Source: Bugula neritina
Taxonomy: Eukaryota; Animalia; Bryozoa
DNA length: 64,000 bases
Reading direction: 5' to 3'
Assembly: GCA_964035545.1 (NCBI GenBank)
Contig: OZ037771.1
Span: 3,793,628 to 3,857,627, forward strand
The notes beneath the pieces were generated by a model. It searched no databases. It had not been told where the DNA came from and saw only the letters and a program-made list of their open reading frames with translations. The number at the start of each line of letters is the position of its first letter. Position 1 is the stretch's first letter. Position numbers and translations under genes: made by a program. This document shows positions 8,223 to 33,979 of this stretch, piece after piece.

Positions 8223-8235
8223 GATGCTGATTTTA

Positions 8236-11821: not shown

Positions 11822-14800
11822 ATGCTGAGGATTATAGTCCCAGTGTTGTTACTAATAGGTACTGCATCTGCCCTTTTTACTGCATCAGAGGTAAGTCTGT
11901 ATTGCTTTATATGCTAATCCTACCTTATATCAAAATTGAGTTGGTGGGGAATATAAAATCAGCATTGGGGCACAGCTAGTTTACATACTCATATGTGACC
12001 TGTTTTTGCATGCAGTTACACCTTGAACACTTGTATATTACATATCATCAGTTTTAGTTAATATAACAAAAATTTAGTTGTATATATGGCTGTATTTTAC
12101 TCGGCATTATGCAGTTGGAGGTTGTGAAAAGATTATGCAATAATATTCTTGACCGGAAACCTGTTTTGATTGCGGGATTTGTACGACTCATATTCCACGA
12201 CTGTGTGGGCGGATGTAACGGGTGTGTGGACCTCAATGTGGCGGACTCGCATGGAGATCAGCCAAATGCAGGCAGGTTTATGCTACAAGATTACACGGAC
12301 TGCATATTATCACTACACCTATGATATGATATTATACTGTCGCTATACTTGTGATATGATTATATGTTGTATTTTCACCATATTTATAATATATGCTTTC
12401 TTTATACTTATAATATATATTTTCGTTACATCTACAATGTAATATATTATCACTATACATATGATATAGTGCATTATCATTACACATGTGACATAGTTTA
12501 TTATTATATTATAATTTGGGTATATAAAAATTATACTTGTAAGTAAAAGCTATAATGTTGATTGAGTTTATTCTTTCAAAAGCTTAATAACTAAAATTCA
12601 AAACATGAGTTGGGATAATAAAATAACTATAGCTTCTTTTTGCCGCGTTAAAGCTTGAATCAACATTGATTTGTCAAAATACGCAGATATTACAAATACG
12701 CATGTGCCACTTGTAATATATTAGTATGTGCAACTTATATGTGTTAAGTGTCAATACGCTATGATAATATTCTGCAACTCTGGTATTGTATGGTGAATTA
12801 GTTTATTTCATATTACGGCATGGTATGTAGTATTTGTTGCAGTATAATATTAATATAATTTATTATAATATGCCATGGTATATATTATAATACATTATGT
12901 TATGTTATTGTGCATTATTGTATAAAATTATAAACTTTTTAGACTTGTGCGTAGATAATTGCAATATTACGTGTATTAACGATACTAATCATTATCACTA
13001 AACTTTGTGGCATCATTCATATATTATGTGTACAAGTTAGTCCGTAAAATGGTGAATATCAAGAGGGAAAAACTCCCAACTCAATTTCCCTTTTCAGGTC
13101 TCGGTCCAAGTATTGCAGAGCTGAATAGAAACTATGTTGAGCTCCAGCAGACTGTTAACATCTCCAGGGCAGACTTCTGGGCTACCTGCTCTGTGGAGGC
13201 ATTAGAAAAGGCGAGATTTTTAGCTAGTAAGTTTTATTTTTATTCACAGTTTTCTTACCAGCTTCGATGTTTATCATTCTAATGTTATTGTAGTATGTGA
13301 TAGGAGCAGCGAGGGAATGTCTTAGTAGTATGTCACACAGATCTAAACACATTTATGATTGAACTTCATAAGTGTACATAAACATAGTAAATCATATATC
13401 CTGTTGCTGACCTGGAATGACTCTTACAGCAGGAGTAAAATAACAGCACAGATGCCAACACAGCTTTATTGTCCTGATTCACATGATTACCAAAACATTA
13501 CAATCACCAATTCGTCTTTTTTAATATTCAGAGATGTAACTACATACTCATAATATCCAAAGTTTGATAGGAAATTATTAGAACATGAAATTTGAATTTG
13601 ATTTAATTTCTAAAGTACAATACCTTTTGTTTGTAGCTAATGACACGTCAAAATCACTCAACATACCGATGTTATATGGACGTGGAGACTGCAGACCTAG
13701 ACTCACTGTTGTTAATACAGATCTCTTTCCAAACCCCCGCGCCGGTCTTACCAAGACACTCGAGTGGTGCCACAGCACTTTTAATTTTAATTCTACTTGG
13801 TGTGTTGCAATCTTAGGTAAGATAAATTAAATGTTAACATTCTTTGTTGTTTTTACTTTTAAACATGCCAACTAGTCAGTTGTGACTAAATTTTTCTTAA
13901 AATAAAACAAGCTTTAGAAATAAGACTCTGCATTCTATGTTGGTTTTGATGATAGACATTATAAATAAACAAACCTGTATTGTAGGTAGAAAGTTTCATG
14001 AAAAAATGGCTTCCACACCTGTCAAGTTTTTTGTGTTGATAGAAGAATAAATCACCATAGAGACTTTGTACTATAAAGAAAACTAAGCTATATTAGTTTT
14101 TTTTCTAATCATTTCTAGCATGTTTGCTGTGTTAGGTGCTCACACACTGGGACAGGCTAGACCTAGTGCTTCAGGATTCCGTGGGCCATGGGTTGCAGAT
14201 GCCCGTCATCTAAATAATGCTTACTTTCAGGATCTGCGAGATAAAAGATGGTTGCAAGTAAGAACAACCATCTCAACCAGAGTCTATGTTTTCGTTGAAA
14301 TAGAACAGTTACTTGGCTGCAGCTGTTTTTTTATTTCAATTATCTCAGATCTCAGTTTTTTTTCTGTATATCAACTCTTAATTTAACTTCGAGGAAAGTT
14401 TGCATTGTAAGTCATAATAATGAGATACTCCTTTAGAATTTCAAAAAATTTGAACTAATTTAGATAAATCGGAGGACGGTGACTGATCCAAGATGGCAGT
14501 TTGAAGCAGAAGGAACGTCAGTGTTTATGATGCTCAATGCAGACATGTGTCTGTATCGGGACATTCAGCCAGACTCTGCAGGACGGTGAGTGGATGTCGG
14601 TGTCTATCTGCTTGATATGTCTATCTGCTTGATATGTCTATCTGCTTGATATGTTTATCTGCTTGATATGTCTATCTGCTTGATATGTTTATCTGCTTGA
14701 TATGCTTATCTGCTTGATATGCTTATCTGCTTGATATGCTTATCTGCTTGATATGTTTATCTGCTTGATATAATTATCTGCTTGATATAATTATCTGCTT

Positions 14801-15498
14801 ATTATGCTTAGCTGCTTAATATGTCTATCTGTCTGCTTGATGTTATTGGGGTTTATGCAATCAGCATGTTGACATACTTGAACTGATTATGAGTTGTCTA
14901 TTTGCTGCTTTACAATTTCTCTGTCTCCATTAGAAAGACTTGTCTATAAGAAGGCTGTGCAACTAGACTGATCTTCTGCCATAAACAGTGCAAAAGTGAT
15001 TGAACAAAAGTTAAAAAGTTACATTTTTAATATTTTGCCAACTTATCAGTAACAGTTTTAAATTAATCTATCAAACTTGTGTAGTAAAAGTTTTACTGAA
15101 ACTAAGTACTTTATTGTACAGAGTTGTGTGCTCTTGCTATTAAAGTCAGTGTGTCTCCTCTTGCTTTGTAGGGTAGTTGATCCACTCGATACCACCCCAA
15201 AGAGCAGCACTGAAGATGATGTCATCGCCTTCGCTGATGACAATGAAGAGTGGATCCGAGTTTTTAAAGCAGTTTGTATTATTAAACCTATGAAATATAT
15301 TTCAAACTATACACTGTACAATTTAGAAATGAACATAATATCCGTCTTTTAATAGGTCATAGGTACATACCTGTAGCAATAATGAGATATATAATGCAAG
15401 AAATGAATCGTAATATACCTCTACTTTATATTCTGTAGGCTTTCAAGTCTATTATTGAAACTTTACCTGATGGAGCTGCACCTTTACAGTCTATATAA
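11822..15498 (+). CDS. Secreted non-animal heme peroxidase (APX-like/plant-type), paralog 1, 312 aa, no C-terminal tail
   Basis: Exons 11822-11890, 12115-12271, 13098-13226, 13637-13816, 14136-14257, 14464-14585, 15172-15271, 15439-15498 (939 nt). Signal peptide MLRIIVPVLLLIGTASA, distal RLIFHDC, PNAGL, SRADFW, YGRGDC, proximal GAHTLG, SGFRGPW, MLNAD. Intron 2 needs a GC donor. Confidence 0.92.
14602..14842. repeat. 17-bp minisatellite (TGTCTATCTGCTTGATA)n, ~13 copies, intron 6 of peroxidase 1
   Basis: Directly visible tandem array. Confidence 0.95.
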
Positions 15499-15947
15499 AT
15501 GCTACCATCTATCCTCTGATCTTACAAAACTAACCTGTGACCTAGCTCTGTGACCTAGCTCTGTGACCTTACATGATGACCTCGCCCGATGACCTCATTG
15601 CCAAGACCTCTGTCTGCTATTTAATTACAATTCCTTTTTTATCAACTTTGTTCATCTTTGAAGATTCTCTTTTGTTATTATTGTATTTTACTACTTGCAT
15701 GTGTGAATTCTTTTCCCCAACATTTCTTGAGTATAGACAATTACTTGCTAATACATTTTTGTGTTTACCAACAGTTGTAGCGCTAAATGCATATTCTTCT
15801 GGCCTCTTAGACCAATTTACTATATTATGTTATTTTACAGAAGTAATTGTTTTTTAAACTTGTTTCGATAATAAATACTCTGAAAATGCTTAGCATGAAA
15901 AACTCAACATACTTATAATGCTCTTTTTGCAAATTCAGCTAAAATAA

Positions 15948-16019
<72 letters not shown>

Positions 16020-17154: not shown

Positions 17155-20100
17155 ATGTTAATTGTGGTATATACAATACTGGCAGCATGTGCGGCAGCGT
17201 CAGCCCAGGTCACCAACAGTGATGTATGTTTATATTTGATTCATTCTATTATATTACATTGCATGATTTTATATAAGAAAGTTATAGAGTCTCCATATTA
17301 TATACACTCTCAACAGCATGATATAATAGTAAATAGTAAATGTGTTAATAATCTAATAATGATTATATACCTATAGCTAAATATAAATAATCTTTTAAAA
17401 GAACAAGTTCTTGAAACTTGAAATATATACAGAAATTGTATCAAATAAATGTATATCTTTCACTGCGTGCACGTGAATAAACAGCATAGTATACTTACTA
17501 ATATAATCAAATATATTATGTAAATTTCAATGATGTTTACAAAATCATTAAATTATAAATATATCAATGATCTGTTAGAAAAGAAAAGCTATAGGGAGTA
17601 CCTATGATTATTATGAAGCAACATTTTATAACCTCATCAAATTTTCTTCAGGAAAACACTGCTAGAGGATTATGCAGAAATGCAATTGCCAGTAATGTTG
17701 AAAACATTGCTGGATTTGTTAGACTCATTTTTCATGACTGTGTGGGGCCATCTGCATCCACCCGCTGCAATGGATGTGTCAACCTCGGGCTAATTGATTC
17801 TAACACAGACGTGGCTAATGCAGGTTATTTTATAAGTGCTTATTAGCTATAGCGTATAAGTTTGGAAACTTGTATGTGCGTGTGAGTGTGTCATAGTATA
17901 TATAATGCATAATTTTAATATTGTAGTTGTAAATTTATGCTCAACTAAAGTTGTTTTCACAAGGTGTAAATATTTTATTTTTGACCTTTACTCCAAAGTT
18001 TATAAAATTATTTTTCTGTAAATAAATACTTCATTGCAGCAAACACACTCTTTCAAGATCTGCAGGTTAAAATTCATAAACTTTGTGTAAAACTGAACTC
18101 TATAAATAGCCTGCTGGTTTGTGAAACTATAATATTGATATCTGAAAACTATAATGCCAAACTTTTAGGTTTGCAAAGATATATCAATGCTCTGGAGGCA
18201 GTTGGACAGTCTAAACCCGCAAGTATCTCTAGAGCAGACTTTTGGGCACTTTGTGCAGATGAAGCTATCCAACAGGGACGTAGAAACAGAGGTTATTGGT
18301 CCATTGTATTACTCATCATTCAACCATCTCAAATATGCATACACAGTTTTGTTTCGCAGCTCTAATTTACCATAATTCTACAATTTTATATATTTATAAT
18401 TCTTTTTTCATCTCCAATGAAATTTTATAAAAAAAGTTTCAAGTTACTATGTGTGGTTATTAGCTTATTTTTTGCTCTTTTTACTATTTTTAAACTGTAA
18501 TATATGGTAACTCAAAAATACCTCTAAAAGTTAATACGTTTTTTTTCTTTTTGAACTTATTGTTTACATGATATATAACTTCAATCCATAAGCTTCTCTT
18601 CAACTTTTTAAAGAAAGAAGACTTCTGCAAAGCAATTTTGTTTATATAACTAACATAATATCACTAATAGTAACTAAAATAAATGCATTGAGCAACATCT
18701 AGGATGAGTAGTTCCAACCAGTAGCTTATGGCTGCGTCTACGCATGAGTTTTTGCTTTTTGATATCTTTTATCATTCATGTTTCTGCATCATATTCATTC
18801 AGATGGTCCCACTGCTGCCAGAGTACCAATAGATGTCAGATTTGGAAGAGTTGACTGCCCTGCAGGACCTGATGACAGATCAGACGTCTCAAACAAAGAT
18901 AAGTTCCCTAACCCTCGGCTTGGCTTGGCCCCAACCCTTGAGTGGTGTAGAGTAACATTTGGCTTTACCACCAGAGAATGTGTGGCCATAATTGGTAAGC
19001 GAGGAATTTGTTTTGCCACATCCTTCGGATATGTGTGCTCATTTCTTAAACCTACTTTGCATTGTCACTGATAAAAGGCCTGCAATTTTCCATCCGTAAA
19101 AAATACCTCATTTATCTGTTATATTATTTTACGTCATAAACTTCAGGCAAGATTAAATCAAACAGTAACTCCTTAATTGAAATGCCCTGACATCTATAAA
19201 ATACTGGAGTATAAGCTGCTGTGATGTTAGGTTTCCTTCCAGAAGTATGCATTTCTTGCCATATCTCTGATTTATACAGACATTAACGTCAACTCTGACC
19301 AATCTAATTATAACTATGCGCTCAGCCAAGAGCCACTTCTTAGGAAGAAAAGATTAATACTAAATTATCTTTTTAATACTTTAACAGTTGTGACTTTTAA
19401 CTCATCACTAGTAACTCATGACCTATAGTTTACTTTATTATATTTTTGAAGCCTCATGCTTTCCTGCAACAGAAATAATGATACATTATTGAGCTAATTG
19501 CTATAAATTTAAAATGTCTGTCTTTTCTTAATTGAGTTCATATATAGCTTGAGCTTTTTGATGAACCCAAAGTGGATTTATGCAGGGGCGCATACGTTGG
19601 GGCGAGCAAGACGAGCTGATTCTGGCTGGAGTGGGCCTTGGGTGAGAGGTAGAGGTCAGTTTATCTTTGACAACCGATACTACATCGAGATGATAGATCC
19701 TCTTAATAACTTTGTACAGGTGAGCTTTTAGTCAATTGCGACATAAGTATTGTCACATTTTTTAGATTATTATCATAAAATCATTACAAAAAGTAGATTT
19801 AACATGTGGTTTACCTTAAAAATTCTTGATTCTATCACTGACAATTTGAAACAGCATCCTGAGAGTTCAGTTTTAAATTTTGTTTCATTTTCTAAATTCG
19901 AACATTTTTTAGGTTTGGTATGAAACAAGTGTTTTAGTAGCTCAAATTCTCCAAATATTCTACAGGTAGATAGTAGAAGGCCTCCCGGACTAACTACAGA
20001 CAACAATTCTCTAAGGTTTCTGTATGAGTCGAGGCGTAACCCGGGTCAAGGACCACCTCCAGGTCAAGGACCACCTCCAGGTCAAGGTCCACCGGGTGGA

Positions 20101-21942
20101 GGCATGGGAAGAATTATCATGTTGAATGCTGATATATGCTTCTTCAAAGATATTATGCCTAATTCAATTACAGGAATGTATGTAGAGGAGACAAATCTTA
20201 ATTTCTTTTTCATTTTCTTAGCTTACCTATAAAGTAATACTAGACATGGGTGTCGGCATACTTTATACAAGTGGAAGTGTAGGTCTACATATATATATAC
20301 ACACACATATATATATATATCAATCTGTGGACAGCAGCTGTTTCGGGATTTGTCCCTTCATCAGCACAGAACAGAGTACCATGGCCCACACCTTCACAAT
20401 AGTAGAAACTTATAGTTTTACTAAAGCATATTTAAAAAGTGTGTAAACCTAAGCCAGAGTGCTCAAGTGACTCTAGGGGCCACTTAGGAGTCACGAGCAT
20501 TGCTAAATGCTAGCAGCTTGAGTTTGTGACCATGGCGAGAGTGCTCAATCATTTAATGTCATTGCTGAGCATTAAATGAGAGCATAATATTTCAATCTGT
20601 GTATACCTCTATATATCTCAATATATGTAGAGAGTCAAGACCAATAACCACAATACCAGACTCTTCAACTGCATCTATTGTAAGAGAATTTGCAAGCAAT
20701 GACCCCCAATGGATTACAGAGTTTGCAATGGTAATGATACTCTATCATGTATGTTTGATTGACAACTGTAATATGCTCAACCAATCAGCATAATTTGAAC
20801 ATGCAGAGTAAATACGCAATCAAAAAAGTCAATAAAGATCTAAATTTTAAGAAGTTGCCATCATTTAAACTAATTGGTATAATATGATTTACTATAATAT
20901 TTGTGATTATAGAAAAGTTAAAAACATTGTTTCAATCTTACTTCATAAACTAAAAGCAAATGCTTATAAACTTAAAGAATAATTGCTTTTTTCCATTCCC
21001 ATGCAAATTTTACATTTAGCATTACATAGTTGATCAGCAAGTTCTGTAAAATAGAGCATATTGTGATGTACTAAACATAACAATTTTACCTGCAGGCATT
21101 CAATAAGATGATCCGGGCTTCTGAGTTGACTGCAGCAGTAGGTGAGAGATATTCTATTAGTAACACTATCGAGTTATTTACACTTATCTAGAATAGATGT
21201 CAACAGATTTAAATACAACATTTAGTTTTAGAATATCAGAGAGCAGCCATAGTCTAGGGGTTAGAGCGTTAGGCTTTGTAAACACGAAGTCATGGGTTTG
21301 AACCCTGACAAAGGCCATTGGTGATGTTAGGAAGATCATCCAGTCAAAATTCCTCCTGTGCTACATCTGAATAAATTCTTAGCCTGTTTTAACAAAAACC
21401 TCTTTCATCAGAGGTTTTCCTACAGAAATGGCAACTATAAGCTTGCGTGAGAGAGTATCAGATTTTCATGCTCATCTCTGTTCTTACCACCATAATATAG
21501 CTATTCTAATAAACGGTACTCATTGATAACCATGTGAAACCTCTGTGTGTTTCTTATTGCATCTTTCAGTGAACTTATATACATGGTTTTAGCTGATGGA
21601 AGTGTAGCTGCTGCCGTACCTGGGCCGCTGCCTCTGACGGATGTTGTGGATACAGAAAACTCACCTGTGATCGCACCTGCACCTGTCCCCATACCTTTCA
21701 TTGTGTTGCCTTCTGCACCTGTAACTGCAGCTCCACCCACAGTTGCTCCGCCTATTGTACCAGCCGCAAACCCAATTCTACCTGCTCCAGTGTTTCCGAT
21801 AATCCCTAGACAGACATTTGGACCCAGACCCAACAGACGACAAAGGCGACGTAGAAACAGACGACAGAACCGACGGAGAGGCAACAGAAGACGGGGTAAC
21901 AGGAACCGAGGTCGTCGTAATAGAGGCCGTAGACTGAACTAG
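17155..21942 (+). CDS. Secreted non-animal heme peroxidase, paralog 2, 465 aa, with GQGPPP insert and Pro-rich linker plus poly-Arg/Asn tail
   Basis: Exons 17155-17223, 17652-17823, 18169-18291, 18803-18994, 19586-19719, 19966-20177, 20631-20730, 21096-21141, 21593-21942 (1398 nt). Signal peptide MLIVVYTILAACAAASA, RLIFHDC, ANAGL, SRADFW, FGRVDC, GAHTLG, SGWSGPW, FDNRYY, MLNAD. Confidence 0.92.
20325..20369 (-). ncRNA. Type I minimal hammerhead ribozyme (Penelope-like-element type)
   Basis: Minus strand: CTGTG-CTGATGA-a-GGGA-caaa-TCCC-GAAA-CAGCTGCTG-TC-CACAG. Stem I 5 bp, stem II 4 bp, intact core, GUC cleavage triplet, palindromic CAGCTG in stem/loop III. Abuts a (TA)n/(CA)n tract. Confidence 0.8.
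21241..21452 (+). mobile_element. tRNA-derived SINE, copy B (peroxidase 2 intron 8)
   Basis: A box TAGTCTAGGGGTTAGAGC, B box GGTTTGAACCC, shared core GGAAG-CATCCAGTCA-AATT-CTCCTGTGC. Confidence 0.8.
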
Positions 21943-24183
21943 GAAAGTTAGAATGCTGAGATAGTTTTCAAATAGCAAGTTTGATCATGAAGACCAGTAT
22001 ATATTATGTTATTTCCCTTCCTAACATTTGGTGTTTTAATGGGTTTTTTTGTAATGTTATCTTTTAGGGATATTTTTTGATTATAACATTGATAATTGAT
22101 AAATAGAAAGTTTGTATTAATGTTTCGTAAAATTACATTTCTGCTTATTAAACTATAATATTCAAGACAAGATATAAACAGTATAGATATTACTGAATAT
22201 ATATCAATGATTTAGCAATTTTAAACTTGCATATTTGTTTGCAAATGACAAAAATAACCCCAGACACTAAAAAGAAGTAACAGCTATAGTTGTAGATTAT
22301 AGCTTGGAAAAATATTAAGTATACGTGAATTTTATGCTAGCAATGTTAGTAGAAATATTCTCAAACTAGTCAAGCATAGCAGCAATCAGTGAACTGTGAA
22401 GGTTTCACTAAACGTCATCATTATACTTTATCATCATCATGCTATTATAATTTTATTATTCATTACTTTGATGCGAAAAATAACTCATAGTGCGTGTAAA
22501 TTTTAAGAAGTTTATACAAATAGGTTTATTTTTGGCATAGTTCGCTCACTGATGAGTATTGTGGTTAGACTAGAGTTAAACTCATACAACATCTATCAGT
22601 TTTATTTATAAATTAAACAGCATGATAGATTAGTAGACAAATCTTAACTCGAATGACGTATAAAATATTACCTCTAGCCAAGAAAAAGATGAAGTTCCTA
22701 ATTTTCTACGACTGATTTATTGAGTTTTATAATAGTTTTGAGCACTGATTTCGATAGCCTAAAATTTTTAATTGCTTTTGATTTGAGGGATAAGCAGTGA
22801 GAGCATAACTTCTTTTGCAAGGGTTTGAGCATCTACAACACAGGTTTTTCTGAATCTATTTATTACAGCATTTTTTGCTGAATATTGCATGCATGCTACA
22901 AGTTTTAGAAACTAAACTACAATTTGAAACACTGCATTTAAGTTGTTAGTTGACAAAAGAGTTTATAAAAATCCTTTGTTATTGTTTTACCAATTATATT
23001 ATTATAAATTATCATACAGTGTATAATGTCATGTGTTGTATATCATATGCATATGCATGTAATGTTACATGTTACATAATATTATATCATGTAATGTTAA
23101 ACGTTATATGCTATATATACATAATATAGTGTTATATGCTATATATTTTAGGACATACAACTTTATGTTATATTAAAAAATATATTGTTCTATATAATAT
23201 ATTGTACATTATATAGTATTTTACATTTTGTCTTATACAATATACAATGTTATGCATTGCAAAACATGCAATATATTATAATGCTGCGTGGTATATATTA
23301 TCATACACTGGTACAAAGGAAACTCAAAAGCATTGTGGTATATTCCTAGTTTGACAGTTTTCCGTATATGATCATGATTTTATAATGTATTAGCTTATAT
23401 GCAATGCAATAGTTTGTAAACATTATACAAAAATGCTGTGCTAGAAAATTCTAGAAAACTAACAAATGCTATAACCTGTATAACCCACACCTATAATCTT
23501 AAGCCGCTACAAATGACATTTGTTTATTGCCAGCTTTACTTAATACAGCCTGTAACAAATATTTTGTTTATTTGTGAATTGGATGCTAACAATATGAGTT
23601 TTCAATAAAAACAAATATGAAAAACATAGATATAATATTATGTTATCATATAAATAGAAAGAAATTGGAAAATAGTTTAATTTGAAAGTATTTTGAAAGA
23701 CTGGAAGTTTTATTACTTGCAATTATAATCTCATAAAGATAATTTTCTTATGGAATTTCTTTTGTAAAGATGCATGAAACATACATAAAAGAAAAATATT
23801 TACTTTTAAACTTTTTAGAAAGTATAAAACAAATAATTATTTCCAATATTTTATTTAGATAACAAGTGCATGCCCTTAGCACAGTACCCATGTAATAGTT
23901 GTTGTTCCTAAAGCTTTTATATATACTATAACTGCATATTCTAAAAATAAAAATACAACAGAATGTGATAGATGTGGTATAACCTTTTTATTATAATGAG
24001 GTATACAAACCCCTTTACCTTCAGCTTATACATCCACTCTGTACGTAATTTTACCATGTCTAACGATTAATCTACTGATTAAATTAATAAAATATAAATT
24101 ATAGGCAGCTTATGCTAACAATTTACTCTTATCTGACGCCTTCACCTCCTTGTATTAGTAGCAACTTTGTGCAACACAGAGCA

Positions 24184-24231
24184 TATAAATAAGAGCAATT
24201 CTTGCCACAAGAAGCATAGAAAGCTGGAAAG
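24184..24231 (+). promoter_or_regulatory. TATA box and short non-coding first exon of peroxidase 3
   Basis: TATAAAT at 24184 followed ~45 nt later by AAG|GTAAGA. The arrangement is conserved in the paralog 4 upstream region (29785-29832). Confidence 0.6.
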
Positions 24232-24776
24232 GTAAGACAGAGTGGAAAGTGCTGTGCATGCATCAAACTTATATATTTATTCTAAAATGATAGTAATATC
24301 TACGTATATTCAACTTTGAGATTAATTTTATTTTATAAATTCAATAACAATTGCATTATTGTTATGACCTGATGAATATTTGAAGTAGAATTTACTTGAG
24401 AAAGTTTTAATTTTGCTTTTGCATGGTTGCTTTTGTTAATCATGAAGCTCATTAAATGTAGTGAATTTTCGAATATTTCGTTCACTTGACAATTTTTGCA
24501 CCACTAAAAACATTATGACTCACTATAATTTTAAAATAACATTCTGTAAAAATAATATGCTGTATTATTTCAGAAGTCAAAAATATCTAAGAAATGTATC
24601 GCCAAGATAACTTTACCAAACTCAATCATAATAACATGCTGTTGTCTTTATATAATATATAAAGTATTATTTATTAATGCTCATACACATGTTAGATAAA
24701 TTTATTTCAAATTTTCTAGTAATATAAAAAATTGCAGTAAATACTTTTATAACTCCCTTTTAGATAATAGAGCAAG

Positions 24777-27700
24777 ATGATTTCTGCAGCCATGTATAGA
24801 CTTGGATTCATCTTACTGCTCTTATCATCAACAGCGGAGGGTGTAACAACAGCCGAGGTAAGTCATATCATAGACTGTGTCTCTTGGTAGTTCAGAATTT
24901 GCACTATGAATTATGTTCACTCTACACTTTTGTTATTTTATTACCTCTAAGCTGAGGCTTTTTCCATTCTTTTAGCAGCTCAGAGTCATCCTGTGATTTG
25001 CATAAAAAACTAAATCAGAAGTGTTTCTTAGAGGAATCTTGCATGAACAGATAATTTAGTAACTATCAGACAAGCACTTCTTACATGCCTTCACAAAATG
25101 AATGTCGTATCTCTACACTGTGACTGTAAGCTAAGCAATTATTCTCACAAACATACACAGTTTACTATTTATTTGAAGGAAGCGCAAGCAAAGGCCTCGT
25201 GTAGATCTGCATTAAGGAATAACAGAGAAAACATTCCCGGGTTTGTGAGGCTAGCTTTTCATGATTGTGTTGGTGGATGTAACGGGTGCATCAACTTGAA
25301 CCTGGTAGACCCAACAAACTTTGATCAGCCAAATGCCGGTAAGTGAGGTGTTCAGACTAAACTGTCACTGAACAAAACTCAATACCGCTGTCAGGAATTG
25401 AGTGTAGAGTGAGCTTAAACTCCTTGTCATTGATTTCAATAGAAGTTAGGATAACAACTTGCAGTTAAAATATGTCTGTGCTGCCTACAGATTGAGTTTC
25501 CTATCCTTTGAGTTGAAGTTAACATGGAAGAAAACATCTTGCCAATCTGTTTAATATAAGATCTTCCTGCCAACCAATGTCAAATGGTGGTAACTTAGTA
25601 TCCAAACTGTTATTTCTCTTTCAGGATTGAGGAGGTATGTTGACGAATTAGAAAGGCGAATAGCAGCTGGTGATAAGCCAGCCAGCATGTCTAGAGCAGA
25701 TTTCTGGATTCTTTGCTCTGTAGAAGCTCTGCAGAATGCAAGACAAGGCGCAGGTATAATTTTCTTACTACAATCTTAATGTGATGCTGACAGATTTTTG
25801 TATATTATTTTCACCTACAAACTTAATTTATCAAAAAAATTTGTAGAGAGTAAAGAAAATTAGCTTCATAGATGAGCATCTGCATGAATCAACTAGGTTA
25901 ACTGTGAATTATTGGGAATTGCTGATTTCTTATTTGGACAGGAAGAGGTCCACTGAATATTAATATGGTCTATGGACGGCAGGATTGCCCTGATGGTCCA
26001 TACACTGCATCTACAGTAAATGCGGCTAACTTTCCAGACCCCCGTCAAGGACTAGCTGTTACAGTGAAATGGTGTTTAGATACATTTGGACTAAACGACC
26101 AGTCTTGTGTAGCACTACTTGGTAAGTTTGATCGCATATCTGTAGTTTCTATTCATTCGCCAACTTTAAATGAAGCCAAAATCATAATGATAATGTGAAG
26201 TAAGATCATCAGTAATCTTCTAATTTTAAGGTTCATAAAACTTCAAACATAAAAGCAGACTTTATGTTTCACTTTAGTTCCACCGTCATAGAATTTTCAC
26301 GTGCAAACTGGTTTTATAGACTGCAGCTAACACTCTACGGCCTACGCAATGCCATACGTACTTAGCTGCAGCTTGTAAAATTAATGATAATTGACTACCC
26401 ATCTGAAAAGACTGAAGGTATGTTTTATGATGTTTATTATTATAGGAGCTCACACATTGGGAAGGGCAAGAGCAAGATCTTCTGGATTTGAAGGAGCCTG
26501 GGTTAGGGGAGCTGGAGAGTTCCACCTGAATAATGGCTACTATAGAGAGTTAGTAGATGGACCTTGGATTCAGGTATATTACTTATAAGAACTCATTTAC
26601 CAAGCTATGTTTTATAAGCTATGTCAAAAGACTTAGTTGAGAAGGGTTTAGCCTATCATGGACCAGGTTGTGTTATATCTCACATGTGTACATGATAAAC
26701 AATTCATCATGCTCAAAAGTGTTGCTGTTTGCAAATTTCCAACTTTACATTCAATCTCAGTGGTCACTGCATGGTGCTCTTGCTTAGATATTGAGGCAGT
26801 TGAGTTGTAATTTTTTCAGATTGATAGAACATTAGAACGCTTTTATTAGCCATTATTTCATTAAGCTTCAATTTATTACAAGGCTTATAAGATATAAAGG
26901 GAGCAGCTGTGGTCCAGGGGTTAGAGCGCTTGCTTAGTAAGCACGAAGTCATGGGTTCAAGCCCTAGTGATGTTGGGAAGAGCATCCAGTCATAATTGCT
27001 CCTGTGCATCATTTAAATAAGTCCTTAGCCCACTTTGACAAAAACCCTTTCTTTCAGGGGTTTCTCACAGGGATAGCGACTACAAACTTGGGTGAGATGT
27101 TTTTAACTGATAGCAAGTCCAGCATATAACTTTAAATGCCTCTCCCCTGCTCAGTTGTGGCATAAATATCATCATTTCACAATTGTTACTTGTTTTAGAA
27201 TAATAATAACCCGAGTAACAATCTTGCTGATCAGAGATGGCAGTTTGAGCAGAGGGGTGGATTCGGAGGGCCTAATCTTTTGATGCTTAATGCCGACATG
27301 TGTTTACTAAAGGACATTCAACCTGAAGCCATATCTGGAAGGTAAGTGAATGCTCTTTCAGCTACATACTATTTGATCTAACCTTATCACGGCAGCTGAA
27401 TGTACTATTTAAAAATATTAGAAAACCCTAAAGTGTTTTCCTAAAATAAATTGTTTTGGGTAGGAAAACTTTCAAATCCCAAAAAATAGGCTACTGAATT
27501 TTTATTGTCACTTCTACTAACATGGCTTAAACTTGAGAGTATTGCAACTGCTTGGTGCTATAAAAAAATTAATTTCAAAATAAAAGTATAGCGGGCAAAA
27601 ATGTGGAGTTTTATTGTATGTAATGTAACAATTTTGTCTCAGTTTTGGTTCTCTATTAACACCAAATTATTTAATTTCTTAGAGTTGTTCCATCAAACCC

Positions 27701-28968
27701 TGATAGCATGCCTGATTCACCCACTGCTACATTTGTAAGAACGTATGCTTTAGATGATGAAGCCTGGATTAGGGATTTTACAGGTGTAAGTAAAATCACA
27801 TTTTAAATTTTATTTATAGTTCTTGTATATTAAAAATTAGTAATAATGAGTTTATATATGTTATATTTTATTTTACGTTAATTTTAGGCTTTCAATGTGA
27901 CGATAAACAAACTTACTACTGCAGCTTTCCTTACAGGCCCCACAGGTAAGCTGAAATTAAAATGATTCAGAGAGAAATGTCAAATTAAATACCCACATAA
28001 AATGAAGTAAACAAAAAGCTAAACATATTTGCACTAAACAAAATCATATAATGAGCAGACAACTTCAAATAAGGAATAAAGTTCAAATGTAATGAAAGTC
28101 TCTAGTCTAGTCTGTTATAGAAAGTATTTAGGGTGCAGTGTGGTCTAAAGCACTGGATTAGTAAACACAGCGTCAGTACTGGTTCCAATACCAGACAAGG
28201 TCAATGATGTTGTTAGGTAGGGTATTCAGTCATAATTACTCCTTTTCCACAATACGAAGCAGTTTCCTAGCATGCTTCAATCAGAGCTCTTCGCACCAGA
28301 ATCTCTCACATGGGTAGCGACTATAAACTCACTTCAGGTATAGCATGTAGGCCTATAACTGATTTATTATAGTTCTAGTAATAGAAGAAACAGAAATTAT
28401 ATTGTTGTATACCAACATTGCTAGCTAAGTATTTTAATGCAGTATTAGTACCTTTATAGTCATGCTTATGTTTAAATCAGCTTTACAAAAGTTAAATACT
28501 ATTTTTTTATTCTTCATTTTAGGCCCTGTTATAAATGATGTAGATAATCGAGTTGATCCTCTTGGAGATTTTCCAATTCAAAATTCGATTCTTCAAATAG
28601 TTATGAATCCAGGTGGAGACCCACCACCTCGGGGTAGAAACCTGCCACTTCCAGGTGGAAACCTACCACCTCAGGGTAGAAACCGACCACCTCAGAGTAG
28701 AAACCTACCACCTCGGGGTAGAAACCTACCACCTCAGGGTAGAAACCTACCACCTCAGGGTAGAAACCTACCACCTCAGGGTAGAAACCTACCACCTCAG
28801 GCTAGAAACTTCCAACCTCAAAGTGGAAACCTACCACCTCAGGGTAGAAACCTGCCACTCCCAGGTAGAAACTTACAAACTCCAAGAAACTTGCCATTTC
28901 CTAGAAACCGACCACCTCGCGGAAATCCGAGATTCGGAGCTCGTCCTCGTCGACGAGGAAGGCTCTAA
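24777..28968 (+). CDS. Secreted non-animal heme peroxidase, paralog 3, 475 aa, with (RNLPPQG)n tail
   Basis: Exons 24777-24857, 25179-25338, 25625-25753, 25942-26121, 26446-26573, 27199-27341, 27683-27785, 27888-27945, 28523-28968 (1428 nt). Signal peptide, RLAFHDC, PNAGL, SRADFW, YGRQDC, GAHTLG, SGFEGAW, MLNAD. Confidence 0.92.
26899..27096 (+). mobile_element. tRNA-derived SINE, copy C (peroxidase 3 intron 5)
   Basis: A box TGGTCCAGGGGTTAGAGC, B box GGTTCAAGCCC, same core as the other copies. Absent from the equivalent paralog 4 intron. Confidence 0.8.
28131..28335 (+). mobile_element. tRNA-derived SINE, copy D, diverged (peroxidase 3 intron 8)
   Basis: TGGTCTAAAGC...GGTTCCAATACC head, core GGGTATTCAGTCATAATTACTCCT and tail GGGTAGCGACTATAAACT match the family. 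Confidence 0.65.
28621..28920 (+). repeat. Coding 21-bp tandem repeat (AGAAACCTACCACCTCAGGGT) encoding RNLPPQG heptads
   Basis: About 11 heptads plus 3 shorter units in the last exon of peroxidase 3. Confidence 0.95.
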
Positions 28969-29784
28969 AAGCACATGCTTAAGAACATCAACTAGTGTGT
29001 GACTATTATGATAGTTAGTGACAATTTGTTAGCAAATGACTAATAATTTCTTATTGTAGAAAACTTTGATATCTGTTAAAGAATGTAGTTTGTTTATGTT
29101 ACAAATGACATCAGTTTCACTGCTAAAATAAATTTAAAAGCCTCAGTTAACACTTTGTTATGTATCACATTTGTTAAGTCAGCAATAAGGCAGAGTACAT
29201 ATAGTAGTATTTGTATTTGTACACCTGCGCACTACACCTGTACATTAAATACACTAGACATCTGCACTGCAATCAATTGGTACATATGCTAATTCTACAT
29301 GGAATAAGTCAAGATGTCAAGTGAAATAAACATCTAGCAGGCAGGTATGCATTTGAACAAATAAATGAGAACAGCAATCAATAAACACCGTAATTAGCAG
29401 CAGTTGAAATAAAACTATAATATATGCATGGCATATAAACATAGTACTATATTTATATAGTTAACAAATGCATTCATTTAGCACAGCATCCATGTAAGAA
29501 ATGTTGTTTTAAAAACTTCACGTTGTATACAACTAGCTTATGAATGAAAATAATATAACAGAAATGTGGTAGATGTGGTGTAACCTTTCTGTTATAATGA
29601 GGTAGACACACCCCTTTACCTTCAGCTTATATATCAACTCTGCAGGTAATTTTACCATGTCTAACGATTAATCTACTGATTAAATTAATAAAATATAAAT
29701 TATAGGCAGCTTATGCTTAAATCTTACTCTTATATGACGCCTTCGCCTCTTTGTATTAGTAACAACTTTGCGCAACACAAAGCA

Positions 29785-29832
29785 TATAAATGCGAGCAAT
29801 TCTTGCCACAAGAAGCAAAGAAAGCTAGAAAG
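29785..29832 (+). promoter_or_regulatory. TATA box and short non-coding first exon of peroxidase 4
   Basis: TATAAAT then AAG|GTAAGG; duplicate of 24184-24231. Confidence 0.6.
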
Positions 29833-30374
29833 GTAAGGCAGAGTGAAAAGCACTGTACATGCAAAAAAATAGTAGTCAATTGATATTGTTTTATTATAAA
29901 AGAATAGTAGTATCTATATTCAACTATGAGATGAATTTTATTTTAAATTCGAGTAATTCCACAACTTACAATAATGTTATGACATGATGAATATTGGAGG
30001 TTGAGTTTTATTGGGTAAGTTTTATTATAATTATTGCTTTTTCTTCAAATTCAATTTGTTGATCATGGAGCTCTAATTCAATATTTTTGTCCCTTGGCAA
30101 CTTTTGTAGGAGTAAAAAGTTTGTGACTCACTAATTCTAAAATATTTTTTTGTAGAATATACTGTATTATTTCTAGAGTAAGAAATACCTGACAAATGTA
30201 TCACCAAAATAACTTTACATAACCAAATTGTAGTAATAGACTATTGCCTTTTTATACTATAGAATGTTTTTTTAATGCTAATACATTTATGTTAAGTAGA
30301 CACATCACAACTTTTCTAGTAATGTAAAAAATTGCAGTAAATGCTTTTAACTCCCTTTTAGATAATAGAATAAG

Positions 30375-33300
30375 ATGATTTCTTCAGCCATGTATATACT
30401 TGGATTCATCTTACTGCTCTTATCATCAACAGCGGAGGGTGTAACAACAGCCGAGGTAAATCATATCATAGACTGTGCCTCTTGGTAGTTCAGAACTTGC
30501 ACTATGAATTGTTTTCTCTCTACACTCTTGTTACTTTATTACCTCCCAGCTGAGGCTTTTCTCAGTTCTCTGGCCAGCTCAGAGTCATCCAGTGATTTAC
30601 ACGCAAAGCTGATTAAGTTTTCTAAAAGAATATATATATTGCAATGAACAGATAATGTAGTGACTGTTACTGTCAAGAATATAGCTGCTGTCCCACAAAA
30701 CATCCTAAATTTAGAAAAAACACTTTTTACATGCATTTACAAAATGAGTGTCTTATCTCTACACACTGACTGTAATTGCTAGGCAGTTATGGTCATACAA
30801 ACATACACTCACTATTGATTTGAAGGAAGCACAAGCAAGGGCATCATGTAGATCTGCATTATGGAATAACAGAGAAAACATTGCTGGGTTTGTGAGGCTA
30901 GCCTTTCATGGTTGTGTTGGTGGATGTAACGGGTGTGTCAACCTGAACCTGGTAGAACCAACAAACTTGGATCGACCAAACGCCGGTAAGTCACTAAACT
31001 GTCACTGAACAAAACTCAATAACAGTTTCAGGAATCAAGTGTAGAGTGAGCTTAAATACCTTTTACTGTTTTCTATTTGTTTTTTTAACAAACAGAAGTT
31101 AAGACATAAACTTACATGAAATATCTTTTGCTTGTAGCCTATCAATTGAATATTTTTTGTTTTTAAAAATCAAGTAAACTTGGGAGAAAACATCTCACGG
31201 GCTGTTTATTGCTACTTACTAATCAATCTAATGTTTTAAGGTGGTGGAAACTTAGTATCCAAACTGTTGTTTCAATTTTAGGACTAAAGAGGTATATTGA
31301 TAGTTTGGAAGGGCAAATAGCAGCTGGTGGTAAACCAGCCAGCATGTCTAGAGCAGATTTCTGGATTCTATGCTCTGTGGAAGCTCTGCAGACTGCAAGA
31401 CAAGGCGCAGGTATAATTTTCTTACTACAATCTTAATGTGATGCTGACAGATTTTTGTATATTATTTGCGCCTACAAACTTAATTTATCTAAAAATTAGT
31501 AGAGAGTAAAGAAAATTAGCTTTATAGATGAGCACCTGCATGAGTCAACTAGGCTAATTGTGAATTATTGTAAAATGCTGACTTCTTATTTGGACAGGAA
31601 GAGATCCTCTGAATATTAATATGGTTTACGGAAGACAGGATTGCCTTGATGGTCCATACACTGCATCTACAGTAAATGCGGCTAACTTTCCAGACCCCCG
31701 CCAAGGACTAAATGTTACATTGAAATGGTGCTTAGATACATTTGAACTCGATAGCCAGTTTTGTGTAGCACTACTTGGTAAGTTTAATCGCATATCTGTA
31801 GCTTCTATTTATTGTCAACTTTAAATGAAGTCAAAATCATAATGATAATGTGAAGTAAGGTCATCGGTAATCTACTTATTTAGTGGTTTTTAATCCTCAT
31901 AAAACTTAACAGCATAAGAACTTATTTTACACTTCCTACAAAACATACTACTATCATAGAATTTTCAAGTTCAAACTGATTTTATTGACTGCAGTCAACA
32001 CTTTAGTGTCTTTTTGTAATGTACCTAAGTACTTAGCAGCTTATAATTAATGACAGCTAAACACCCCTCCCCTTAGAAACTAAAGGTAGTTTCATAATCT
32101 TTGGTTATTATAATATAGGAGCTCACACACTGGGGAGGGCAAGGAAAGAAGCTTCGGGGTTTGAAGGAGCCTGGGTTCCAATATCTGGCGAGCTCCTATT
32201 GAATAATGCTTTCTATGAGGAGTTAGTCATAGGACCCTGGGTTCAGGTATATTAGTTATATTAAGCTAAATTATGTATGCAATTCAAGAGGCTTAGTCAA
32301 CCAATCACCTATAGGATCAGGTTGATTTATGGTACACAAGTGTTGCTGTTGAAAAACTTTCAACTTTGTATCCAATCTCATTAGTCACTGCTGTTGGTGC
32401 CTGAAGAAAACAACAGCTAAGTTTAAACTGTAAAATAATTGCCTCCACCGGGATTCGAACCACATACCTCTGGCTTGCAAACAGGTGCGATAACCAATTA
32501 CACCACAGGGGCTTCGGGATTCCTAACAACAGCAACCTTTGAGTTTAATTGAGTGTTAAAGCCACATTTTATTAGCCATTATTTATTAAGCTTCCCTTAA
32601 TCCTAAAAAGTTTATAATATAAGCTTTTAATTAATGTATAAATGCATTTAAAAGCTTGGAGTATTCTTCTCTTGCAATCCTTCTGCCTGTTAACGCTTGA
32701 AGTTTTATATTTATGAATGTTGTGGAATATTGTTTTATCATAATTGAACACCACTGTAGGTGGTGTGATTCAAACTTTGCTCACTTTTCACAATTTTTAT
32801 GCAACAAATTTCTAAACAATTAACAAGTAAGACAGCAAAGAAAAATTATATAATAACTATTTGATAGCAAGTAAAAAAATTGAAGTGGCTATGCACATTT
32901 CTGGCATATATACACCAGGTATTTATTTTAGGTTGATAAAAACCCAAGTAGCACTCAAGGTGAACAGAGATGGCAGTTTGAGAAGAGTGTTGCAGGAGAG
33001 CCGAATATTTTAATGCTGAATGTAGACATGTGTTTACTAAAAGACATTCAGCCACAAGCCAAATCTGGCATGTAAGCAAATCCTATTTTAGCTACATACA
33101 CCATCTAAATTAATCTAGGAAGTAGAATACAGCATTTTCAAAATGTAGAAAGCTTTACTGTGGTTTTATAAGATAAATTATTTTAGGTGAACACATTTTT
33201 CAAATTCAAAAGAAATAAGCTATTGAAATGTTGGTAATTTCTACTCACCATGCTTAAATTCGAGAGAGTTACAACTGCCTTATGCCATCAATAATTTTCT

Positions 33301-33979
33301 CCTAGAACCGAAAGTATAGCTAACAAAAATGTGGAATTTTATTAAATATAATAATTGTGTCCCAGTTTTGACTGGCTATAAATACTAAATTATTTAATTT
33401 CTTAGAGTTATACCACCAAACCTTATTGGCATTCCTGATTCCCCCACTGCTTCGCTTGTAAGATTGTATGCTTTAGATGATAGAGCCTGGATTAGGGATT
33501 TTACTCATGTAAGTAGTATTTCATTATAAATTTCATTAGCTCTTGTATATTTAGAGTTAATATGAGTTAATATATATTATATTTTATTTTATGTTAATTT
33601 TAGGCGTTTAATGTTATGATAAACAGGCTGAGTACTGCAGTTTTTCTCACAGGCGCCACAGGTAAGCTGAAATTAAAATGCTTCAGGTAAAAATATCGGA
33701 TTAAATTCCCACTTAAAAGAAAGAGCTGCACATGAAAACCAATCATATTAACCAAGTTTAAATAAGGAATTAAGTTAAAATATTATGGCAAGTATTCTCC
33801 CAACATTTATGACTTCAGGTAAAAATCTACCTCAAAGAAACTTATCACCACGTAGAAACTTGGCATTTCCTAGAAACCGACTACCTTTTGGGAATCAGAG
33901 AAGACGTAGTAAGCTTAAAAAATTTCAAGAAAGCAGGCTTAGGAACATCACAGCACCAACTTATAATTTCTTATTGTAG
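30375..33979 (+). CDS. Secreted non-animal heme peroxidase, paralog 4 (recent duplicate of paralog 3), 379 aa, FHGC variant with shortened tail
   Basis: Exons 30375-30455, 30826-30985, 31282-31410, 31598-31777, 32119-32246, 32932-33071, 33406-33508, 33604-33661, 33819-33979 (1140 nt, no stops). RLAFHGC, GAHTLG, SGFEGAW, MLNVD. The last-exon acceptor is inferred. Confidence 0.85.
32440..32512 (-). pseudogene. tRNA-like pseudogene or tRNA-derived SINE head
   Basis: Minus strand GCCCCTGTGGTGTAATTGGTTATCGCACCTGTTTGCAAGCCAGAGGTATGTGGTTCGAATCCCGGTGGAGGCA then TTTT. Good A/B boxes and tRNA length, but acceptor, anticodon and T stems are mismatched. Confidence 0.7.

What the first reader, a model, noticed from the sequence alone, without database searches (positions are those of the whole stretch)
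11822..33979. Tandem array of four secreted plant-type (non-animal superfamily) heme peroxidases embedded in an animal genome
Seen: four same-strand paralogs with signal peptides, conserved intron positions and phases, intact frames and the catalytic set (distal R..H, H-bonding Asn in NAGL, proximal His, proximal Asp in MLNAD/MLNVD). They sit between clearly metazoan-context genes (Fe65/APBB, RPS3, HARS). Established: animals mostly use the peroxidase-cyclooxygenase superfamily; peroxidase-catalase superfamily members are patchy in invertebrates (e.g. the plant-like Hydra APX, proposed to be laterally acquired). Inference: an old, fully intronised acquisition has expanded locally into a diversified extracellular oxidative system, e.g. 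for cuticle/adhesive cross-linking, pigment or defence chemistry.
Basis: partly seen in the sequence, partly recalled or inferred. Interest (0 to 1): 0.85.

Follow-up and report, generated by a model that had tools for sequence, protein, structure and literature searches.

The report
Four tandem secreted haem peroxidase genes
Four neighbouring, intact genes in a Bugula (bryozoan) genome encode secreted 'plant-type' haem peroxidases. They belong to an already described animal branch of that enzyme superfamily, so this is a real local gene expansion, not a fresh gene transfer.

Summary
Four same-strand, intron-rich, intact genes lie at 11822-15498, 17155-21942, 24777-28968 and 30375-33979. Each has a signal peptide, the distal Arg/His, the H-bonding Asn, and the proximal His, Trp and Asp. 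All four share intron positions and phases, and they sit between RPS3, an APBB/Fe65-like gene and HARS.

- The genes belong to the secreted "metazoan putative ascorbate peroxidase" clade described by Zamocky et al. 2014 (PMC4232752).
- Named homologues occur in Watersipora, Lingula, Owenia, Hydra, Clytia and a copepod.
- In my ML tree all named animals form one clade (UFBoot 97). An AU test does not reject bryozoans grouping with green algae (p 0.09).
- The window array is one of several clusters: about 24 copies lie across this genome. The scan had already noted this family eight times elsewhere in the same genome.

Points that go beyond the known picture:
- The active site is a hybrid: the distal side resembles class III and the proximal side resembles class I.
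- The ascorbate-binding Arg is absent, so the database name "ascorbate peroxidase" is doubtful.
- Three genes carry Pro-rich polybasic tails on a separate 3' exon.
- The intron-rich structure is shared by bryozoans, whereas the Hydra, Lingula and Owenia genes examined have none or one intron.

Comparison with the published B. neritina assembly gives core dN/dS of 0.26-0.30. I could obtain no RNA evidence.

The parts
11822..15498 (+). G1: secreted haem peroxidase gene, 8 exons, 312 aa, no C-terminal tail
   Evidence: Exons: 11822-11890, 12115-12271, 13098-13226, 13637-13816, 14136-14257, 14464-14585, 15172-15271, 15439-15498. Key codons: distal Arg 12184-12186, distal His 12196-12198, proximal His 14141-14143, proximal Asp 14542-14544. 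The exon 2 donor is GC at 12272, or alternatively GT at 12276.
17155..21942 (+). G2: secreted haem peroxidase gene, 9 exons, 458 aa, with a Pro/Ala/Val linker and an Arg/Asn-rich end
   Evidence: Exons: 17155-17223, 17652-17823, 18169-18291, 18824-18994, 19586-19719, 19966-20177, 20631-20730, 21096-21141, 21593-21942. Key codons: distal His 17733-17735, proximal His 19591-19593. It has a 5-residue insert in the distal Cys loop and a GQGPPP insert in exon 6.
24777..28968 (+). G3: secreted haem peroxidase gene, 9 exons, 475 aa, with a heptad-repeat polybasic tail
   Evidence: Exons: 24777-24857, 25179-25338, 25625-25753, 25942-26121, 26446-26573, 27199-27341, 27683-27785, 27888-27945, 28523-28968. 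It is 88% identical to B. neritina 'APX2' P0156. The orthologue in the published assembly keeps all 8 splice sites and an intact 481-aa frame. Core dN/dS is 0.30.
30375..33979 (+). G4: secreted haem peroxidase gene, 9 exons, 379 aa. The distal motif reads HGC instead of HDC, and the basic tail is short.
   Evidence: Exons: 30375-30455, 30826-30985, 31282-31410, 31598-31777, 32119-32246, 32932-33071, 33406-33508, 33604-33661, 33819-33979. It is 90% identical to B. neritina P0297. P0001, the G4-like N-terminal fragment on the same B. neritina contig, reads HDC. Core dN/dS against the orthologue is 0.26.
21593..21942 (+). G2 tail exon: 116 aa, 22 Pro, 23 Arg+Lys, net charge +19
   Evidence: Joined in phase 1 behind a TTTTAG acceptor. 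Composition. No Pfam family at E <= 1. The tail end aligns at 82-89% amino-acid identity to L008:151-377 in the other assembly.
28523..28968 (+). G3 tail exon: 148 aa, 35 Pro, net charge +19. It contains a 21-nt (heptad) array at 28612-28876.
   Evidence: TRF reports period 21, 12.6 copies and 84% matches (family D2). The orthologue keeps the frame with one extra 21-nt unit (467 vs 446 nt). Tail dN/dS is 0.76. No Pfam family.
33819..33979 (+). G4 tail exon: 53 aa, net charge +13. Only the 3' part of the G3 tail exon is retained.
   Evidence: The DNA alignment to the G3 tail region shows the 5' part and most repeats are missing in G4. The phase-1 acceptor lies at 33817-33818. The orthologue has an open frame that ends earlier.
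23962..34287 (+). Two copies of a ~5.6 kb tandem duplication unit (G3 with its flanks, then G4 with its flanks)
   Evidence: Direct-repeat families D3-D17 are spaced 5598-5733 nt apart at 75-93% identity, and the last one (D5) 5002 nt apart. The duplication predates the split from the published B. neritina lineage: G4+P0297 has support 100/100.

Best explanation
The region holds four functional paralogous genes for secreted haem peroxidases of the peroxidase-catalase superfamily. They belong to the animal clade usually annotated 'putative ascorbate peroxidase'.

Shown here:
- The frames are intact, intron positions are conserved, and all haem-catalytic residues are present.
- The core is under purifying selection.
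- The arrangement is collinear in a second Bugula assembly.
- In the ML tree the four genes lie inside a well-supported bryozoan clade. That clade sits within a larger one holding every named animal sequence.
- About 24 copies lie across this genome.

Inferred mechanism:
- After signal-peptide cleavage the enzymes fold in the secretory pathway around haem. The 9 core cysteines suggest four disulfides.
- Outside the cell they use H2O2 to oxidise small aromatic or phenolic donors rather than ascorbate, because the ascorbate-binding Arg is missing.
- This would give radical cross-linking or tanning of extracellular matrix (cuticle, adhesive), or oxidative defence.
- In G2, G3 and G4 a Pro-rich spacer ending in a strongly basic stretch, encoded by a separate 3' exon, probably tethers the enzyme to polyanionic matrix or cell surfaces. 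G1 would be the freely soluble form.
- G4 has lost the Asp next to the distal His. In class II/III enzymes that Asp is a calcium ligand. G4 may therefore be altered in stability or function.
For: - Gene models and catalytic residues.
- PF00141 on the distal exons.
- Nearest database proteins are Bugula neritina 'APX2' (88-90% identical), Watersipora, Owenia, Lingula, Hydra and Clytia 'putative ascorbate peroxidase', all carrying PF00141.
- A secreted metazoan clade is described in PMC4232752.
- Careful ML tree: animal clade 97/87, bryozoan clade 100/99.
- The copepod identity of P0320 follows from TSA GFUD (PMC6105596).
- The seven intron positions and phases are identical to Watersipora P0013.
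- A Clytia intron lies after 'WTQ' in phase 0, at the same aligned place as bryozoan intron 5.
- Orthologue comparison: core dN/dS 0.30 (G3) and 0.26 (G4), with dS of about 0.20 close to the intron distance of 0.15-0.18. All splice sites are kept. The tail frame is kept across an in-frame 21-nt indel.
- Hybrid site: the distal exon best matches class III plant peroxidases. The proximal exon best matches class I APX/CcP. The full-length homologue best matches class I.
- APX Arg172 aligns to Ser in G3 in the HMMER alignment. The same fixed offset from the proximal His gives Ala, Asp and Ala in G1, G2 and G4.
- Basic Pro/Gly/Arg tails recur in transcript-derived family members.
- Genome census.
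Against: - There is no transcript or protein evidence for these four genes.
- Joining the tail exons to the peroxidase is predicted. It rests on phase, acceptor quality and frame conservation in a second lineage. The NCBI gene range there also covers the tail exon.
- Tail dN/dS of 0.76 is only weak constraint.
- Substrate, calcium binding and disulfide pattern are untested.
- The deep position of the bryozoan clade is not firm: AU p 0.089 for a grouping with Mesostigma/Tetraselmis.
- Class II, class III, hybrid B, Amphimedon and Caligus reference sequences were not in my tree.
Confidence: 0.75

Rival explanations
1. Lineage-specific horizontal transfer. An ancestor of cheilostome bryozoans took the gene from a green alga (or another protist it fed on). 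The gene then gained introns and multiplied. The copies in other animal phyla would be separate acquisitions.
For: - The nearest named non-animal relatives are green algae. Mesostigma is 39% identical to P0156 and Tetraselmis striata 35%, about as close as other animals.
- The AU test does not reject bryozoans plus that algal group (p 0.089).
- The Hydra gene is intronless. The Owenia gene has one intron at a different place, and so does the Lingula gene. A second Lingula gene is intronless. So most introns are not shared across phyla.
- Distribution among animals is patchy.
Against: - In the best ML tree all named animal sequences (five phyla) form one clade that excludes the named algae (97/87).
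- One intron position and phase is shared between Clytia and the bryozoans.
- Paralogues within the bryozoan clade are only 44-50% identical and share seven introns with Watersipora. Any transfer would therefore be very old.
- Composition and intron style match the neighbouring animal genes.
- Zamocky et al. 2014 recovered a metazoan-only clade.
Confidence: 0.12
2. They are true ascorbate peroxidases, as the database names say. They would scavenge H2O2 with ascorbate as an antioxidant defence.
For: - NCBI names for the homologues are 'putative ascorbate peroxidase' and 'APX2'.
- The proximal exon is most similar to plant APX, with an SGFEGAW stretch.
- The proximal Trp is kept.
Against: - The distal residue is Phe, not the class I Trp.
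- APX Arg172, which binds ascorbate, aligns to Ser in G3. The same offset gives Ala, Asp and Ala in G1, G2 and G4.
- All four genes have signal peptides and 9 core cysteines, and three have extracellular-type tails.
- Zamocky et al. themselves say that ascorbate use is unverified.
Confidence: 0.1
3. They are non-functional relics, unexpressed copies, or an assembly or contamination artefact.
For: - No RNA evidence was obtained.
- G4 carries HGC instead of HDC.
- G3 and G4 differ with dN/dS of 0.40.
- The assembly does contain at least one foreign contig carrying a homologue of this family (C139).
Against: - All four frames are intact across 8-9 exons.
- The orthologues in an independent assembly keep every splice site, with core dN/dS of 0.26-0.30.
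- The array is collinear with its animal neighbours in both assemblies.
- The window lies inside a contig of more than 13 Mb.
Confidence: 0.03

Closest known systems
Metazoan 'putative ascorbate peroxidase' clade of the peroxidase-catalase superfamily (Zamocky et al. 2014, PMC4232752: Hydra viridis APX, Amphimedon AqAPx, Caligus CaroAPx1)
   Same: PF00141 fold signature, a signal peptide, and animal hosts. In my tree the window genes share a clade with Hydra, Clytia, Lingula, Owenia and copepod sequences.
   Different: The bryozoan genes are intron-rich (7-8 introns against 0-2 in the Hydra, Lingula, Owenia and Clytia genes I examined). They are multiplied to about 24 copies. Three of the four carry Pro-rich polybasic tails on a separate exon. 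I did not compare the Amphimedon and Caligus sequences directly.
Class I ascorbate peroxidase and cytochrome c peroxidase (including the Leishmania APX-CcP hybrid)
   Same: These are the closest solved structures by sequence for a full-length homologue and for the proximal exon. The proximal His, Trp and Asp and the NAGL Asn are kept.
   Different: The distal residue is Phe instead of Trp. There is no Arg172 equivalent. The proteins are secreted and Cys-rich rather than cytosolic or organellar.
Class III plant secretory peroxidases (HRP, palm and soybean peroxidases)
   Same: The distal FHDC...GC motif gives the best PDB matches for the distal exon. Both groups have a signal peptide and are extracellular.
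   Different: The distal Cys loop is one residue shorter and carries a third Cys. The proximal side is class I-like, with Trp. Over the whole length the homologue is nearer to class I.
Fungal hybrid B peroxidases (peroxidase plus WSC domain; PMC5571214)
   Same: A secreted peroxidase-catalase domain with a C-terminal extension thought to anchor it to extracellular polymers.
   Different: The extension here is a low-complexity Pro/Arg tail with no Pfam domain, not a WSC domain. The host is an animal, not a fungus.

Membership tests
Peroxidase-catalase superfamily (Pfam PF00141) | Match to the PF00141 profile | tested here: met
   As single distal exons, G3 scores 28.2 bits (cut-off 27); G1 scores 25.2, G4 22.4 and G2 16.9. 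Orthologues P0156 and P0297, 88-90% identical, carry PF00141. Whole spliced products were not scanned because they have no reference.
Peroxidase-catalase superfamily (Pfam PF00141) | Distal Arg and His, H-bonding Asn, proximal His and Asp | tested here: met
   All five are present in G1-G4, with codon coordinates given. Alignments to APX/CcP and to class III enzymes place them at the catalytic positions.
Metazoan secreted 'APx' clade (Zamocky 2014) | Groups with Hydra-type animal sequences, apart from class I and algal sequences | tested here: inconclusive
   The ML tree puts all named animals in one clade at 97/87. The AU test does not reject bryozoans plus the Mesostigma/Tetraselmis group (p 0.089). 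Amphimedon, Caligus, class II and class III sequences were not in the tree.
Metazoan secreted 'APx' clade (Zamocky 2014) | N-terminal signal sequence | tested here: met
   Each of the four products starts with a hydrophobic leader of 17-22 residues on its own exon. I judged this by eye because no signal-peptide predictor was on hand.
Ascorbate peroxidase sensu stricto (class I APX) | Ascorbate-binding Arg172 | tested here: not met
   APX 'KERSGFEG' aligns to G3 'RARSSGFEG', so Arg172 falls on a Ser. The same offset from the proximal His gives Ala, Asp and Ala in G1, G2 and G4.
Ascorbate peroxidase sensu stricto (class I APX) | Distal Trp next to the distal His (R-L-x-W-H) | tested here: not met
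   All four genes read VRL-x-FH. The class I-like outgroup sequences in the same searches read WH.
Class III plant secretory peroxidase | Closest overall to class III; proximal Phe rather than Trp; class III disulfide and calcium pattern | tested here: not met
   The full-length homologue P0005 is nearest to class I among solved structures. The proximal GPW/GAW Trp is kept. Only the distal exon resembles class III. Disulfides and calcium sites could not be tested.
Fungal hybrid B peroxidase | C-terminal WSC domain (PF01822) | tested here: not met
   The three tail exons give no Pfam family at E <= 1.

The most novel reading that the evidence does not exclude
Bryozoans turned an intron-poor, low-copy animal peroxidase into an intron-rich family of about two dozen genes. 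These genes carry interchangeable C-terminal anchoring modules: none, Pro-rich polybasic tails, and (according to earlier scan notes) GPI-like ends and mucin stalks. Together they would form a matrix-tethered extracellular oxidation toolkit for hardening the cuticle, curing larval adhesive or surface defence. The hybrid class I/class III active site would not use ascorbate.
Probability: 0.25. Interest if true: 0.55.

Novelty: new member of a known kind. Interest (0 to 1): 0.3.

Why it matters
The result corrects a tempting reading. 'Plant-type' peroxidases in an animal genome are not in themselves a sign of recent gene transfer. This clade is spread over at least five animal phyla and is in the literature.

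What remains of interest is modest but testable:
- No member of the animal clade has been characterised biochemically, as far as I found.
- The database label 'ascorbate peroxidase' is probably wrong for these genes.
- The bryozoan expansion, with its polybasic tails, offers a natural set of soluble and putatively anchored forms to compare. That bears on how sessile marine animals harden or defend their surfaces.

Tried and rejected
- Single-exon Pfam scans of exons 3-5 gave nothing at E <= 0.01. Only the distal exon is recognisable alone.
- The third homologue search, with B. neritina APX2 as query, found no close transcript-derived Bugula protein.
- My first exact exon-chaining script failed for four of six loci. 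I replaced it with tblastn anchors plus an exact junction search.
- None of the 348 proteins fetched up to one search was a class III plant peroxidase; the single FHDCF match was a 94-aa fragment with this family's own GGCDGC motif. My tree therefore lacks class II and class III references.
- Rfam (gathering thresholds) and ARAGORN found nothing in the window.
- I considered that the family replaces lost animal haem peroxidases. That is rejected as a simple story, because PF03098 genes are abundant in this genome. One paper does report that bryozoans lack the 'mantle peroxidase' orthologue (PMC9484238).
The spliced window proteins have no reference, and a model of a 45-50% identical homologue could not settle disulfides or metal sites without coordinates.
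- The joined (spliced) products were used only inside local scripts. They were never sent to a search or fold tool.
Full report
**What is there**

A frame-by-frame reading of 11.5-34.5 kb shows four runs of + strand exon-sized open stretches with peroxidase motifs. I placed splice sites using three criteria: frame continuity, GT-AG rules and agreement among the paralogues.
- G1: 11822-15498, 8 exons, 312 aa.
- G2: 17155-21942, 9 exons, 458 aa.
- G3: 24777-28968, 9 exons, 475 aa.
- G4: 30375-33979, 9 exons, 379 aa.

Every model reads through to a single terminal stop. Intron phases are 0,1,1,1,0,2,0, plus a phase-1 intron before the tail exon in G2-G4, and the introns fall in the same alignment columns. 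Two junctions are uncertain. The G1 exon 2 donor is GC at 12272 or GT at 12276. The G2 exon 4 acceptor is 18824 or 18803.

Exon 1 of each gene encodes a short hydrophobic leader. Exon 2 carries the distal Arg and His and the NAGL Asn. Exon 5 carries the proximal His and a Trp, and exon 6 the proximal Asp. G4 alone reads HGC where the others, and its own B. neritina counterpart P0001, read HDC.

The distal exon on its own matches Pfam PF00141. Each core has 9 cysteines.

**A note on method**

The joined spliced products have no reference. They were used only inside local scripts (alignment, tree, dN/dS) and were never sent to a search or fold tool.

**Context, and whether the array is real**

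The flanks are ordinary animal genes:
- RPS3 (KH_2 and Ribosomal_S3_C domains, - strand, 5.7-7.5 kb).
- An APBB/Fe65-like gene (PID and WW domains, - strand, 36-40 kb).
- HARS (+ strand, 45-50 kb).
- A Rieske / ring-hydroxylating oxygenase (- strand, 52-57 kb).

GC content is even across the window. The window lies at 3.79 Mb of contig C7, which is longer than 13 Mb, in a 216-Mb genome.

The best database matches are Bugula neritina proteins at 88-90% identity. An earlier follow-up note names the genome B. neritina. DNA identity to the published assembly GCA_010799875.2 is about 85-90% over exons, introns and spacers alike, so this is a closely related but distinct lineage.

That independent assembly has the same order: G2 tail, G3 orthologue, G4 orthologue, then the PID gene on the opposite strand. 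An assembly chimera is excluded.

G3 and G4, with their flanks, are two copies of a ~5.6 kb tandem unit. The duplication is older than the split of the two Bugula lineages: G4 pairs with P0297 at 100/100 support.

**Are the genes functional?**

I used selection instead.

I projected the G3 and G4 exons onto the published assembly. All splice sites are kept and both frames are intact.
- Core dN/dS is 0.30 for G3 and 0.26 for G4.
- dS is about 0.20, close to the intron distance of 0.15-0.18.
- The G3 tail exon keeps its frame across a 21-nt (one repeat unit) length difference. Its dN/dS of 0.76 is typical of a disordered, composition-constrained segment.
- Between G3 and G4, dN/dS is 0.40.

**What family is this?**

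A profile of the four distal exons was searched against 1.8 billion representative proteins. It found 488 matches at E-value 0.001 or better. Cluster names and word-index searches gave these named relatives:
- Bugula neritina 'APX2'.
- Watersipora subatra 'putative ascorbate peroxidase' (two).
- Owenia fusiformis (ten).
- Lingula anatina.
- Hydra vulgaris and H. sinensis.
- Clytia hemisphaerica.

There are also many unnamed marine metatranscriptome proteins.

Zamocky et al. [quoted passage not shown] It includes Hydra viridis APX, a sponge enzyme and a sea-louse enzyme.

My careful ML tree has 80 rows and 315 columns, under LG+C20+F+G4.
- All named animal sequences fall in one clade (UFBoot 97, SH-aLRT 87). 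This includes the copepod Neocalanus flemingeri, identified through its TSA prefix GFUD.
- The sister group holds Mesostigma, Tetraselmis striata and unnamed sequences (97/85).
- The bryozoan sequences form a clade at 100/99.

The deep order is soft. An AU test does not reject bryozoans plus that algal group (delta lnL 3.4, p 0.089). The tree also lacks class II, class III, hybrid B, sponge and Caligus references, because none was retrievable as a referenced sequence.

**Gene structure across animals**

| Gene | Introns |
|---|---|
| Watersipora P0013 | Seven, at the same aligned positions and phases as the window genes |
| Watersipora P0005 | Six of those seven |
| Hydra P0203 | None |
| Owenia P0146 | One, phase 2, inside the distal motif |
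| Lingula P0049 | One, near the N-terminus (its neighbouring gene has none) |
| Clytia P0331 | Two |

The second Clytia intron lies directly after 'WTQ' in phase 0. That is the same column and phase as bryozoan intron 5. This is a hint of common descent, although the site (CAG|G) is also a classic proto-splice site.

The intron-rich structure is therefore a bryozoan trait, arising by gain there or by loss elsewhere.

**Size of the family in this genome**

A six-frame profile search of the genome gave 85 exon matches. About 24 of them are separate proximal-His exons, on contigs C1, C3, C4, C5, C7 and C9. Further clusters lie at C7:13.78-13.79 Mb, C3:14.92-14.95 Mb and C3:10.93-10.94 Mb.

Within the window the matches fall only between 12.1 and 33.1 kb, so no fifth copy or fragment is present.

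The scan had already noted this family eight times on other DNA of the same genome. Those notes include variants with the distal Arg replaced by Gln, a mucin stalk with a polyarginine tail, and GPI-like ends. I did not test those claims beyond seeing matches at the corresponding places.

Animal-type haem peroxidases (PF03098) are also numerous here, so this family does not simply stand in for them.

**How the enzymes probably work**

The active site is a mosaic.
- The distal exon is most like class III plant peroxidases (palm, soybean, HRP). It has Phe beside the distal His and an FHDC...GC...GC cysteine loop.
- The proximal exon is most like class I APX and CcP and keeps the stacked Trp.
- A full-length homologue is nearest to Leishmania peroxidase, CcP and APX among solved structures.
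- APX Arg172, which binds ascorbate, is not conserved. It aligns to Ser in G3 in the HMMER alignment. The same offset from the proximal His gives Ala, Asp and Ala in G1, G2 and G4.

Taken with the signal peptides and nine cysteines, this argues against a classical ascorbate peroxidase. It favours an extracellular peroxidase acting on other small donors. That conclusion is an inference, because no substrate was tested.

**The tails**

G2, G3 and G4 end in a separate exon encoding a Pro-rich stretch followed by a strongly basic end. Net charges are +19, +19 and +13.
- The G3 tail is built from 12.6 copies of a 21-nt unit.
- G4 keeps only the 3' part of that exon.
- G1 stops in exon 8 and has no tail.
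- No Pfam family matches the tails.

Similar Pro/Gly/Arg-rich ends occur in transcript-derived relatives: P0006, P0157, P0131, P0344, P0319, P0200 and P0031. So such tails are a recurrent, expressed feature of the family.

The simplest reading is electrostatic tethering to anionic extracellular material. This too is an inference.

**Verdict**

The 'plant-type peroxidase in an animal' framing describes a clade that is already published and already annotated in several animal genomes. A bryozoan-specific transfer is neither needed nor firmly excluded.

The four genes are new members of a known kind. The points worth a bench test are the likely mislabelling as ascorbate peroxidases, the hybrid site, the tails, and the scale of the bryozoan expansion.

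Noticed in passing
G000:C139:26826-27809 (- strand; locus L007:1327-2310): A 28.8-kb contig of the same assembly carries an intronless homologue of this peroxidase family. It has in-frame TAA codons and no other stop type inside the match. This fits a ciliate nuclear code, so the contig is probably from an epibiont or contaminant, not from the bryozoan.
   Followed up: partly
window 52000-57000, - strand: A multi-exon gene with Rieske [2Fe-2S] and ring-hydroxylating alpha-subunit domains (Pfam hits at 54211-54417 and 52918-53190). It may be a Neverland-like or choline-monooxygenase-like oxygenase.
   Followed up: partly
window 14554-14865: A 17-nt minisatellite of about 18 units that starts at the end of G1 exon 6 and fills the start of intron 6.
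   Followed up: no
window 49190-49600 and 55050-55490: Long trinucleotide arrays that read as poly-Thr, poly-Ser, poly-Val or poly-Leu in different frames. One lies within or next to HARS and the other within the Rieske oxygenase gene region.
   Followed up: no
window 38900-39370: A tandem repeat with an open frame in all three + frames (a 'HYTHSTLYSQYTILTV'-like unit), lying inside the APBB/Fe65-like gene on the opposite strand.
   Followed up: no
window 21184-21339, 26836-27017, 32405-32549: Intronic stretches whose translations look like tRNA-derived SINE sequence. ARAGORN and Rfam report nothing there.
   Followed up: partly
L006 (Watersipora subatra OY755167.1), gene at 8001-14945: Watersipora paralogue P0013 ends in a hydrophobic stretch resembling a GPI-anchor signal instead of a basic tail. 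Owenia P0004 is annotated as two peroxidase domains in tandem in one 599-aa product.
   Followed up: no
L002 (Lingula anatina LFEI02000069.1) 6001-8719: Two peroxidase genes of this family lie tail to tail, about 460 bp apart. One has a single intron and the other has none.
   Followed up: no
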